From: Magallana gigas
Lineage: Eukaryota
Length of the DNA stretch: 64,000 bases
Direction: 5' to 3'
Assembly: GCF_963853765.1 (NCBI RefSeq)
Contig: NC_088859.1
Span: 46,810,001 to 46,874,000 of the forward strand
Positions 11,310 through 12,719 of this stretch are shown in pieces; position 1 is the stretch's first letter, and every line of letters starts with the position of its first letter. A model generated the notes under the pieces. That model was not told the origin of the DNA and searched no databases. It saw only the letters and a list, made by a program, of their open reading frames with translations. A program made the translations under genes and the position numbers.

Positions 11310-12664
11310 AATGTACGGAGGGAAGGAATTACTCTACCAAAGTCTTTCGATCAGCATTTTTAAAGTCATCATTTTACATTATTTGTATTTTAAGCATATT
11401 GAAGTAAATGTTACATTTTATTTCTTTATTGATTACTTGTTAAATAACAAGTAACACATGTTTTGTAAACTTTGTTGTTGTCATCATTTGCATGCGAGAT
11501 GACCTTGAGGTTGTCATTAAATGATTTTATAACCAACTACCTTATTATTTTTTCTACTAGCAGAGAACAGAATGTAACTCAGTTCTCTAAAGGTAATATA
11601 ATGATAAGAATTTTTCCCTACATAAATGTTTTAATAATTAGTCAATCTAAGTACTACTGCCAAAAACAATTGAAGCAAGCTGTGAAAGATCAGCAGTTTA
11701 AAATACATATAGACGACTCAAGTAGAAGAAAACGTAAGAAATTAGAAGTTGTGAACTTGCTTCTGATCGTTTTGTATTATGAAATTCGTTCAGTATTCAA
11801 GTGACAACTCGAGCAACCTACTTGTATAGAGGTGGTAGATTGATAAATAGAGGTAGTTGATTGAAATTGTGACATGATAGAGTGAAGAGAATATCAACAG
11901 GAGTTATCGCTCTTGTTGTCCATGCTGTATAAAATTGTTGAAATAAAGTAAAATCTTACTCTGGCAAAGACAATATACATCTTGTGAGTTTTAATTATCA
12001 ACTTTGTGGAAACTCATGTGATTTATCTACAATGTATATTAGATGTAGTATAATATGGTTTCTCCATAGGCCTATATGATATTTCAAAGTATTTGATCCT
12101 CGGGACCTTCGTTATTCGACCTTGACCAGACACCAGAATTATCTCCTCCACTACTCGGGGAATAGAATGTTTCCCAGTACAAAAAAAGAGGAGGTAAAAG
12201 TCTTCTAGATGCTTCCAGATGACTACTAATTTATTGAAACATAATTCAAACGACTTTCATTATAGAACATTCCCAAAAAATTACTCATTAAATAAAATAT
12301 AATGTATATAATAAATAATAGATATTTATTACGAGAAACCCTGAAAATGAAATATGTTTATTTGAACCCCCTGAATCATTTATACTTTTGTAAAAGCGCG
12401 CAAGCATCTTGATATGATCTTACTGTACAAAAAGAGGAGGAAAAAGACTGCTTCCAGTTGACTACTGGAGAGATGCTTTCACAGCACCTCCTTTTTTTAC
12501 GGGTAAATGTGGTCAAATCCATACAAATAATGATCCATTTCAAAAATTCGGATTAATGTAACATGTAAAACAATGGAAGTTTTCAGCATGGCCCTTGGCA
12601 CATTGTAAATTGTTATTGCTGGGAGTCTGAAGGCAAGACAGAGCCCCAGACCACTGCCCACAAT

Positions 12665-12719
12665 TATGGCACGCCAAATTCACAAAAATTAGCTAAACAT
12701 AGTTTCACAGTCGATAAAC
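12665..12719 (+). repeat. Left terminal inverted repeat
   Basis: TATGGCACGCCAAATTCACAAAAATTAGCTAAACATAGTTTCACAGTCGATAAAC. Confidence 0.93.

What the first reader, a model, noticed from the sequence alone, without database searches (positions are those of the whole stretch)
12659..12719. TATGG...CCATA ends with a 6-bp TSD on a RAG1-like transposase: a mismatch of signatures
Seen: the outer element has CACAAT[TATGG...CCATA]CGCAAT and the nested element GTTTAC[TATGA...CCATA]GTTTAC, two independent insertions showing the same end and TSD rule. Established: Transib and RAG transposons have CAC...GTG ends and 5-bp TSDs. As I recall (verify), TAY...RTA ends with 6-bp TSDs are listed for the IS3EU superfamily, described as having an IS3-like transposase. 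CAC does occur immediately inside the TATGG. Inference: either a RAG-like enzyme evolved a shifted cleavage position and stagger, or some TAY..RTA elements are misclassified or chimeric.
Basis: partly seen in the sequence, partly recalled or inferred. Interest (0 to 1): 0.7.

Follow-up and report, generated by a model that had tools for sequence, protein, structure and literature searches.

The report
Nested transposons fake a signature mismatch
The TATGG...CCATA ends and 6-bp duplication are real, but they belong to a small gene-less transposon into which the gene-carrying, possibly RAG1-like transposon later jumped; that inner element has its own CATG... ends and leaves no target duplication.

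Summary
Observation confirmed. A 59-nt inverted repeat TATGGCACGCC.../...GGCGTGCCATA sits at 12665 and 19814, flanked by CACAAT/CGCAAT. A second element at 12986-14099 is flanked by a perfect GTTTAC. Genome-wide, both families obey a strict 6-bp rule: 12/21 and 18/22 exact, none at 5 or 7 bp.

The link to the transposase is wrong. The window holds three nested transposons:
- The TATGG ends belong to a 234-bp copy of a high-copy non-autonomous family (487 ends in the genome). Its TA..TA termini, long inverted repeats and 6-bp duplications are the published IS3EU/GingerRoot signature.
- The two-gene element is a separate transposon at 12840-19755, with 13-nt repeats CATGCCAAGAAAT. Two sister copies (97% identical) and a diverged paralogous family carry these ends without any TATGG sequence. 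A relative from another organism has the same 5' end.
- The GTTTAC element is a later insertion that the sister copies lack.

The inner element shows no target duplication at 4 of 4 copies, and two paralogous empty sites confirm this. Its ends read CAT..ATG, not CAC..GTG. Its RAG1 likeness is only weakly supported: there is no Pfam or PDB sequence hit, and the support is two colinear motif alignments plus language-model neighbours.

The scan's notes describe similar IS3EU-like elements elsewhere in this genome.

The parts
12659..12664 (.). Left 6-bp target-site duplication of the host MITE (CACAAT)
   Evidence: 5/6 match to CGCAAT at 19815-19820. The 6-bp rule is shown genome-wide.
12665..12839 (+). 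Left 175 bp of a short (234-bp) copy of the TATGGCACGCC non-autonomous family. The terminal inverted repeat is 12665-12723.
   Evidence: With the insert removed, it aligns end to end with the 259-bp copy in L027 and with the ends of the 0.9-1.3-kb copies.
12840..19755 (+). Inner two-gene transposon with its own 13-nt inverted repeats (12840-12852 CATGCCAAGAAAT; 19743-19755 ATTTCTTGGCATG) and no target-site duplication
   Evidence: Sister copies L031:3415-9628 and L032:3151-9000 start and end at exactly these bases in unrelated flanks. Family-B copy L034:3852-9618 has the same ends. The same end is found in another organism at L088:483. Empty sites.
12980..12985 (.). Left GTTTAC duplication of the second nested element
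   Evidence: A single GTTTAC is present in L031 and L032.
12986..14099 (+). 1114-bp non-autonomous element of a second family (TATGRGGCGCCG ends), inserted in the inner transposon
   Evidence: Of 22 distinct genomic copies, 18 have a perfect 6-bp duplication.
14100..14105 (.). Right GTTTAC duplication
15128..17813 (+). Intron-containing transposase gene of the inner element, about 8 exons; one exon (16928-17182) encodes a SAP domain
   Evidence: Open frames. SAP domain, E=1.3e-11. Exons are conserved in paralogs and in other organisms.
17918..19160 (-). Convergent second gene of the inner element (chromodomain-like start)
   Evidence: Open frames. Weak Chromo match, E=0.17. Conserved in L034, L086 and L087.
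19756..19814 (-). Right 59 bp of the host MITE (its terminal inverted repeat)
19815..19820 (.). Right 6-bp target-site duplication of the host MITE (CGCAAT)

Best explanation
The window holds three nested DNA transposons, not one element with mismatched signatures.

1. A short copy of a high-copy non-autonomous family (ends TATGGCACGCC...GGCGTGCCATA) inserted at CACAAT and duplicated 6 bp. This is the TA..TA plus 6-bp signature published for IS3EU/GingerRoot, so an integrase-type transposase encoded elsewhere presumably moved it (inferred; no partner was found).

2. A low-copy two-gene transposon with its own ends (CATGCCAAGAAAT.../...ATTTCTTGGCATG) then inserted into that copy, between GATAAA and CCTAG, without duplicating any target base.

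3. A 1114-bp member of a second TATG...CATA family then inserted into the two-gene transposon and duplicated GTTTAC.

The 6-bp rule therefore says nothing about the transposase encoded inside.
For: Shown:
- Sister copies L031 and L032 (97% identical over 5.4-5.7 kb) begin at window position 12840 and end at 19755, in unrelated flanks, with no TATGG repeat within reach.
- A diverged paralogous family (55-77% protein identity) has the same termini at L034:3852 and 9618.
- A 47%-identical relative from another organism also starts with CATGCCAAGAAAT (L088:483).
- More than 60 TATGG-family copies read ...GATAAACCTAGTTTATCG... uninterrupted, so the window differs from them by exactly the inserted CATG...CATG block.
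- With the inner block removed, the outer 234 bp aligns end to end with a 259-bp copy (L027).
- Another widely spaced TATGG pair (L043, 7.95 kb, duplication GAAATG) simply hosts a Gypsy retrotransposon.
- The 6-bp rule holds in 12/21 and 18/22 copies exactly.
- The IS3EU/GingerRoot signature is taken from PMC10045372 and PMC6839031, and IS3EU repeats are listed for this oyster in PMC8268682.
Against: - No autonomous partner with TATGG ends was found. The IS3 model hits in this genome are dominated by retrotransposon integrases, so the superfamily label rests on ends and duplication length only.
- The window's own duplication is 5/6, not 6/6.
- Only three copies of the inner element carry both ends, so the nesting is inferred from few copies, though it is backed by a second family and a second organism.
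Confidence: 0.9

Rival explanations
1. One reading: the TATGG...CCATA repeats are the transposase's own ends, and a RAG1-like enzyme has evolved a shifted cut and a 6-bp stagger.
For: The 59-nt repeats do bracket the two genes in this window, and CAC lies just inside TATGG.
Against: - Only one of three copies of the gene-bearing unit has these ends.
- The unit has its own ends, conserved across a paralogous family and another organism.
- The TATGG family has about 490 ends but almost no copies with genes, and its copies read through the insertion point.
Confidence: 0.03
2. The gene block is cargo captured by the small element (a Pack-MITE-like acquisition), not a transposon inserted into it.
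For: GingerRoot elements often carry captured gene fragments (PMC6839031).
Against: - The block has perfect 13-nt inverted ends.
- It occurs with the same exact boundaries at other loci outside any TATGG element.
- It keeps those ends in a diverged family and in another organism.
- It encodes a conserved transposase-like protein found in many eukaryotes.
Confidence: 0.03
3. The two TATG...CATA families belong to a 6-bp-duplicating group other than IS3EU/GingerRoot, such as Dada, Polinton or Ginger2 derivatives.
For: These groups also give 6-bp duplications (PMC3706591, PMC6839031).
Against: - Dada has no terminal inverted repeats and targets small-RNA genes (PMC3706591).
- Polinton ends are AG..TC and Ginger ends are TG..CA (PMC6839031).
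- The families here have TA..TA ends, inverted repeats of 59 to about 200 nt, and no target preference that I examined.
Confidence: 0.1

Closest known systems
IS3EU / GingerRoot DNA transposons (non-autonomous derivatives)
   Same: TA..TA termini, a 6-bp target duplication with no apparent sequence preference, and long terminal inverted repeats (59 nt here, about 180-200 nt in the 1.1-kb copies). The superfamily is recorded in this oyster (PMC10045372, PMC6839031, PMC8268682).
   Different: No integrase-type transposase was linked to these ends here. The match to a Repbase family by the 11-nt terminal rule (PMC4455052) could not be tested. The copies are built of internal repeats of the end sequence, roughly 270 bp apart.
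Transib / RAG-like (RAGL) transposons, including the Chapaev clades of the Transib superfamily
   Same: This applies to the inner element only.
- It has two convergent genes and a very low copy number.
- A D...G..G....CxxC stretch aligns to the RAG1L second-aspartate and zinc-cysteine motif.
- YxHxxxxHVP...IG....E aligns to the RAG1L zinc-histidine pair and catalytic glutamate.
- RAG1 sub-domain clusters are the nearest named neighbours by language-model features.
   Different: - No Pfam RAG1 hit was found.
- Ends are CAT..ATG rather than CAC..GTG.
- The target duplication is 0 bp rather than 5 bp (PMC7204232, PMC4411706).
- The partner gene starts with a chromodomain-like piece and gave no RAG2 or Kelch match in the piece scanned.
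- A SAP domain is inserted in the transposase.
Spy elements (PIF/Harbinger relatives without target duplication)
   Same: Terminal inverted repeats with precise insertion and no duplication (cited in PMC4455052, ref. 3).
   Different: No PIF/Harbinger-type domain appeared in the Pfam scan of the exons. The insertion sites here show no AAA|TTT rule.

Membership tests
IS3EU/GingerRoot (the two TATG...CATA families) | 6-bp target-site duplication | tested here: met
   Exact 6-bp match in 12/21 and 18/22 copies, and 18/21 and 21/22 within one mismatch. No copy matches at 5 or 7 bp.
IS3EU/GingerRoot (the two TATG...CATA families) | 5'-TA...TA-3' termini | tested here: met
   TATGG...CCATA and TATGRGG...CCYCATA in all copies tabulated.
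IS3EU/GingerRoot (the two TATG...CATA families) | Terminal inverted repeats, long in GingerRoot (100-150 bp) | tested here: met
   59 nt in the window copy. The ends of the 0.9-1.3-kb copies align in inverted orientation over about 176-200 nt.
IS3EU/GingerRoot (the two TATG...CATA families) | Autonomous partner encoding an IS3/IS481-like (integrase-type) DDE transposase with the same ends | tested here: inconclusive
   The IS3 model found 47 matches, mostly inside long retrotransposon frames.
IS3EU/GingerRoot (the two TATG...CATA families) | Repbase rule: positions 1-11 of the terminus match a classified family with at most 1 mismatch | not testable with these tools
Transib/RAGL (the inner two-gene element) | Transposase recognisable as RAG1 core | tested here: inconclusive
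   - No Pfam hit on the exons.
- PF12940 finds the true RAG1L genes of this genome but not this element.
- Profile against PDB sequences found nothing.
- Exon-wise hhalign against a 43-sequence RAG1L alignment gave P=0.002 (D..CxxC) and P=0.044 (H, H, E aligned), each above all 30 shuffles. The other five exon profiles gave no signal.
- RAG1 sub-domain clusters are the nearest named neighbours, at 0.86 and 0.91.
Transib/RAGL (the inner two-gene element) | CAC...GTG termini resembling the RSS heptamer | tested here: not met
   Ends are CATGCCAAGAAAT / ATTTCTTGGCATG in two oyster families. A relative from another organism has the same 5' end, and a second relative (L086) has ATTTCTCGGCATG at its 3' end.
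Transib/RAGL (the inner two-gene element) | 5-bp target-site duplication | tested here: not met
   No direct repeat of any length at 4 of 4 copies. Two paralogous empty sites show nothing duplicated.
Spy / PIF-Harbinger (the inner element) | PIF/Harbinger-type DDE transposase | tested here: not met
   No such Pfam family on any exon at E<=1.

The most novel reading that the evidence does not exclude
The inner element (12840-19755) represents a deep, undescribed branch of the RAG1/Transib-like transposases. The branch is widespread in eukaryotes. It carries a SAP insert and a chromodomain partner gene, uses conserved CATGCC.AGAAAT ends, and integrates precisely with a 0-bp stagger. That would be a strand-transfer geometry not reported for any RAG/Transib relative.
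Probability: 0.35. Interest if true: 0.7.

Novelty: new member of a known kind. Interest (0 to 1): 0.4.

Why it matters
The claimed clash between a RAG-type enzyme and an IS3EU-type end and duplication rule would have implied either a re-engineered RAG active-site geometry or errors in transposon classification. It dissolves: duplication length and end sequence still track the enzyme family here.

The case is a clean warning that a long inverted repeat bracketing a transposase gene need not be that gene's own end in a MITE-rich genome.

The residue is more interesting. The real ends of the possibly RAG1-like element are CAT..ATG, and its insertions leave no duplication. If the RAG1 kinship is confirmed, this is a natural variant for studying how target-strand stagger is set in the RAG/Transib family.

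Tried and rejected
- Pfam on ten exon or ORF pieces found only SAP and a weak Chromo match.
- phmmer of three exons and a 26-sequence exon-1 profile against PDB sequences found nothing relevant. Pfam on all 26 members found nothing relevant.
- The whole-library phmmer with exon 1 returned 35 relatives, all short exon-sized ORFs, so no full-length protein was obtained. Word search with the longest of them (P0018) found only itself.
- The metagenome scan gave five more intron-containing loci and no intron-free copy.
- AlphaFold of P0018 gave confident helices, but Foldseek against PDB found no hit at E<=0.001 (best 0.24), and no RAG1 entry was among the rows shown. AlphaFold of the fused last two exons (P0088) had pLDDT 49 and was not searched.
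- An alignment mixing exon-1 and exon-2 fragments was misaligned by MAFFT and discarded.
- A spliced full-length model was not joined, folded or searched. All protein tests are exon by exon.
- The search for an autonomous IS3EU partner used the IS3 model, which was swamped by retrotransposon integrases. Single-ended TATGG loci held no transposase-sized frames.
- CATG as a 4-bp duplication of the inner element was rejected, because both host repeats lack CATG at the site.
- A paralogous empty site for the L031 copy could not be established.
- Dada was rejected for the MITEs because it has no inverted ends and targets RNA genes.

Full report
**Setting.** The window is chromosome-scale contig C7:46810001-46874000 of a 564-Mb genome in 29 contigs. 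The scan's own notes name the organism as the Pacific oyster.

**1.
- A 59-nt inverted repeat, 97% complementary, has arms at 12665-12723 and 19756-19814. Its first 19 nt occur exactly twice in the window, against 0 expected.
- The sequence reads CACAAT|TATGGCACGCC... and ...GGCGTGCCATA|CGCAAT.
- The nested element is at 12986-14099, between two perfect GTTTAC hexamers.
- I tabulated genomic copies of both families. The first has 253+234 ends at up to 2 mismatches, against 0 for a reversed-pattern control.
- Among 21 distinct complete copies of family 1, the flanks match exactly over 6 bp in 12 and within one mismatch in 18. No copy matches at 3, 4, 5, 7 or 8 bp.
- Among 22 copies of family 2, 18 match exactly and 21 within one mismatch at 6 bp.
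- A TA or 5-bp duplication with boundaries at TGG or CAC is therefore excluded. TA..TA is part of the element and the stagger is 6 bp.

**2. The ends do not belong to the transposase.** The exon carrying the second aspartate has only a few genomic relatives. I fetched those loci and aligned the 7.15-kb unit to them.
- Two copies, on C8 (L031) and C6 (L032), are 97% identical over 5.4-5.7 kb. Both start at element position 176 and stop at 7091.
- They begin CATGCCAAGAAATGCC and end ATTTCTTGGCATG, in flanks unrelated to each other and to the window. No TATGG repeat lies anywhere in the 10-kb loci.
- Searches with the 136 nt inside each boundary find only these three copies, plus one further 3' end.
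- The unit that carries the genes is therefore 12840-19755, with its own 13-nt perfect inverted ends.
- A diverged paralogous family (55-77% protein identity exon by exon, same two-gene layout) has the same ends at L034:3852 (CATGCCAAGAAATCC) and L034:9618 (GGATTTCTCGGCATG).
- A 47%-identical relative on a contig from another organism starts with CATGCCAAGAAAT (L088:483). Another relative ends ATTTCTCGGCATG (L086:13791).
- Genome-wide there are 15 exact CATGCCRAGAAATBC ends against 2 for the control.

**3. What the outer 234 bp is.**
- With 12840-19755 removed, 12665-12839 plus 19756-19814 aligns end to end with a 259-bp copy of the TATGG family (L027) and with the ends of the 0.9-1.3-kb copies.
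- At the homologous place, 64 of the roughly 90 instances of this repeat unit examined (several per copy) read GATAAACC|TAGTTTATCG uninterrupted. None of the rest carries CATG there.
- The window reads GATAAA[CATGCC...GGCATG]CCTAGTTTATCG. This is a precise insertion of the inner element into a small non-autonomous element.
- The same thing happens elsewhere. The widest-spaced TATGG pair I saw (7.95 kb, L043, duplication GAAATG) encloses a Gypsy-type retrotransposon.
- The order of events is host MITE first, inner transposon second, and GTTTAC element last. L031 and L032 lack that last element and show a single GTTTAC.

**4. What moves the TATG families.**
- TA..TA termini, 'usually 6 bp' duplications and long inverted repeats are the published features of IS3EU/GingerRoot (PMC10045372; PMC6839031 gives 72 of 77 elements with TA..TA, repeats of 100-150 bp, and 6-bp duplications in 71 of 77).
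- IS3EU-annotated repeats are listed for this oyster (PMC8268682).
- Dada (6-7 bp) lacks inverted ends and targets small-RNA genes (PMC3706591). Polinton and Ginger have other termini.
- I did not find the autonomous partner, so the assignment rests on ends and duplication length.
- Notes from the scan describe similar IS3EU-like non-autonomous elements elsewhere in this genome. I did not test those.

**5. The inner element's own signature.**
- None of the four copies with both ends has any direct repeat at its flanks.
- Two empty sites are available. One is the TATGG family consensus.
- The other is for L032, from contigs of four public runs. These run from base 3150 straight into ATATGACAGTAAAG, the sequence that follows base 9000, with joints at 3148-3150 to 8999-9000. 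The flanks there are a very high-copy repeat, so these are paralogous rather than allelic empty sites.
- Nothing is duplicated or lost at either site. Reading CATG as a 4-bp duplication fails because neither host sequence contains CATG.
- The element thus has CAT..ATG ends and a 0-bp duplication. Protostome RAGL elements have CACTWMCAAACKT ends and invariably 5-bp duplications (PMC7204232). Transib and TransibSU likewise give 5 bp (PMC4411706).

**6. Is the transposase RAG1-like? The support is weak.**

Evidence against:
- No Pfam family matches any exon except SAP.
- The RAG1 model finds the genome's true RAG1L genes (1021-aa frames on C2 and C9) but not this element.
- There is no PDB sequence hit.
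- The two fragment folds were uninformative.

Evidence for comes from exon-wise profile comparison against a 43-sequence RAG1L alignment, which I built from the oyster RAG1L frame and 42 relatives:
- DWKALALLKGINGAQCEFFCMWC aligns to RAG1L DEK...GLQGSGS.YLCTLC, which holds the second aspartate and the zinc cysteines. Score 26.2, P=0.0014, above all 40 shuffles. With more sequences the alignment covers only the G..G..CxxC part (RAG1L 695-714), at 25.5, P=0.0019, above all 30 shuffles.
- A naturally fused version of the last two exons (P0088) aligns over 95 columns to RAG1L 859-966. The pairs YIH/YLH, HVP/HVQ, IG/VG and the glutamate are in register. P=0.044, above all 30 shuffles.
- The other five exon profiles give no signal. 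The first aspartate sits in an SCDG tetrapeptide, which I recall also surrounds the first catalytic aspartate of vertebrate RAG1 (my knowledge, not tested); the oyster RAG1L reads GCDG there. By itself this proves little.

By language-model features:
- The nearest named neighbours of P0018 (exons 1-2) include RAG1 DNA-binding, pre-RNase-H and RNase-H clusters, at 0.86 and 0.83.
- The nearest named neighbour of P0088 is a RAG1_ZnH2 cluster at 0.91. A CACTA-type DUF4218 cluster follows at 0.84.
- In both cases the sub-domains are the colinear ones.

I put kinship with the Transib superfamily in the broad sense (which includes the Chapaev clades, PMC4411706) at about 0.7. Membership of Transib/RAGL proper fails on ends and duplication.

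**7. Verdict.** The finding's observation is correct and statistically overwhelming. Its puzzle is an artefact of three nested transposons. As stated, the result is ordinary: two non-autonomous families with the IS3EU/GingerRoot signature, plus a lesson about nested ends.

The unplanned by-product is worth following up, on the stretch already noted by the scan (12665-19814; its true bounds are 12840-19755). This is a conserved, low-copy, possibly RAG1-like two-gene transposon with CATG ends and no target duplication.

Noticed in passing
G000:C2:53473763-53475607 (L083:373-3417) and G000:C9:44605801-44607645 (L084): Two intact 1015-aa open frames match the Pfam RAG1 core at E about 1e-80. These are the genome's true RAG1-like genes. 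A degraded third copy lies at C6:37214366-37215755.
   Followed up: partly
L043 (G000:C3:50048000-50056400), 233-8185: A TATGG-family copy with a perfect GAAATG duplication hosts a Gypsy-type retrotransposon whose gag-pol frames are broken by only three stops.
   Followed up: partly
L003-L030, e.g. L009:1500-2662: The 0.9-1.3-kb copies of the TATGG family contain internal degenerate copies of their own end (TAAAGCACGCCC-like), about 269 bp inside each terminus. The copies are built of repeated end modules.
   Followed up: no
window 13010-13390 and 13800-14075: The nested 1114-bp element is filled with dozens of short palindromic units centred on GATATC (TTGATATCAAAAAAT-like), forming many overlapping inverted repeats.
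   Followed up: no
L032:3076-3150 and 9001-9075: The flanks of the C6 copy of the inner element are a very high-copy repeat, with summed contig word depth 100 to 1000 times that of the element. At least two of three family-A copies therefore sit inside abundant repeats.
   Followed up: partly
window 16928-17182: A SAP DNA-binding domain (Pfam E=1.3e-11) is encoded by its own exon inside the transposase gene. It is kept in the relatives L086, L087 and L088.
   Followed up: partly
window 19743-19755 and inward (3' end read as reverse complement): After CATGCCA comes a 12-nt stretch and then CCAAAATTC, loosely like a heptamer-12-nonamer signal (6/9 to ACAAAAACC by eye). The 5' end shows no such arrangement. 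This is probably chance.
   Followed up: no
P0001-P0035 and the clusters listed: Relatives of the inner transposase's exons occur in many eukaryotic assemblies; the cluster taxa named include Cnidaria, Mucoromycota, Nematoda and Arthropoda. They always appear as unnamed exon-sized ORFs, and the motif KDRYRISDxALHELHM is highly conserved.
   Followed up: partly
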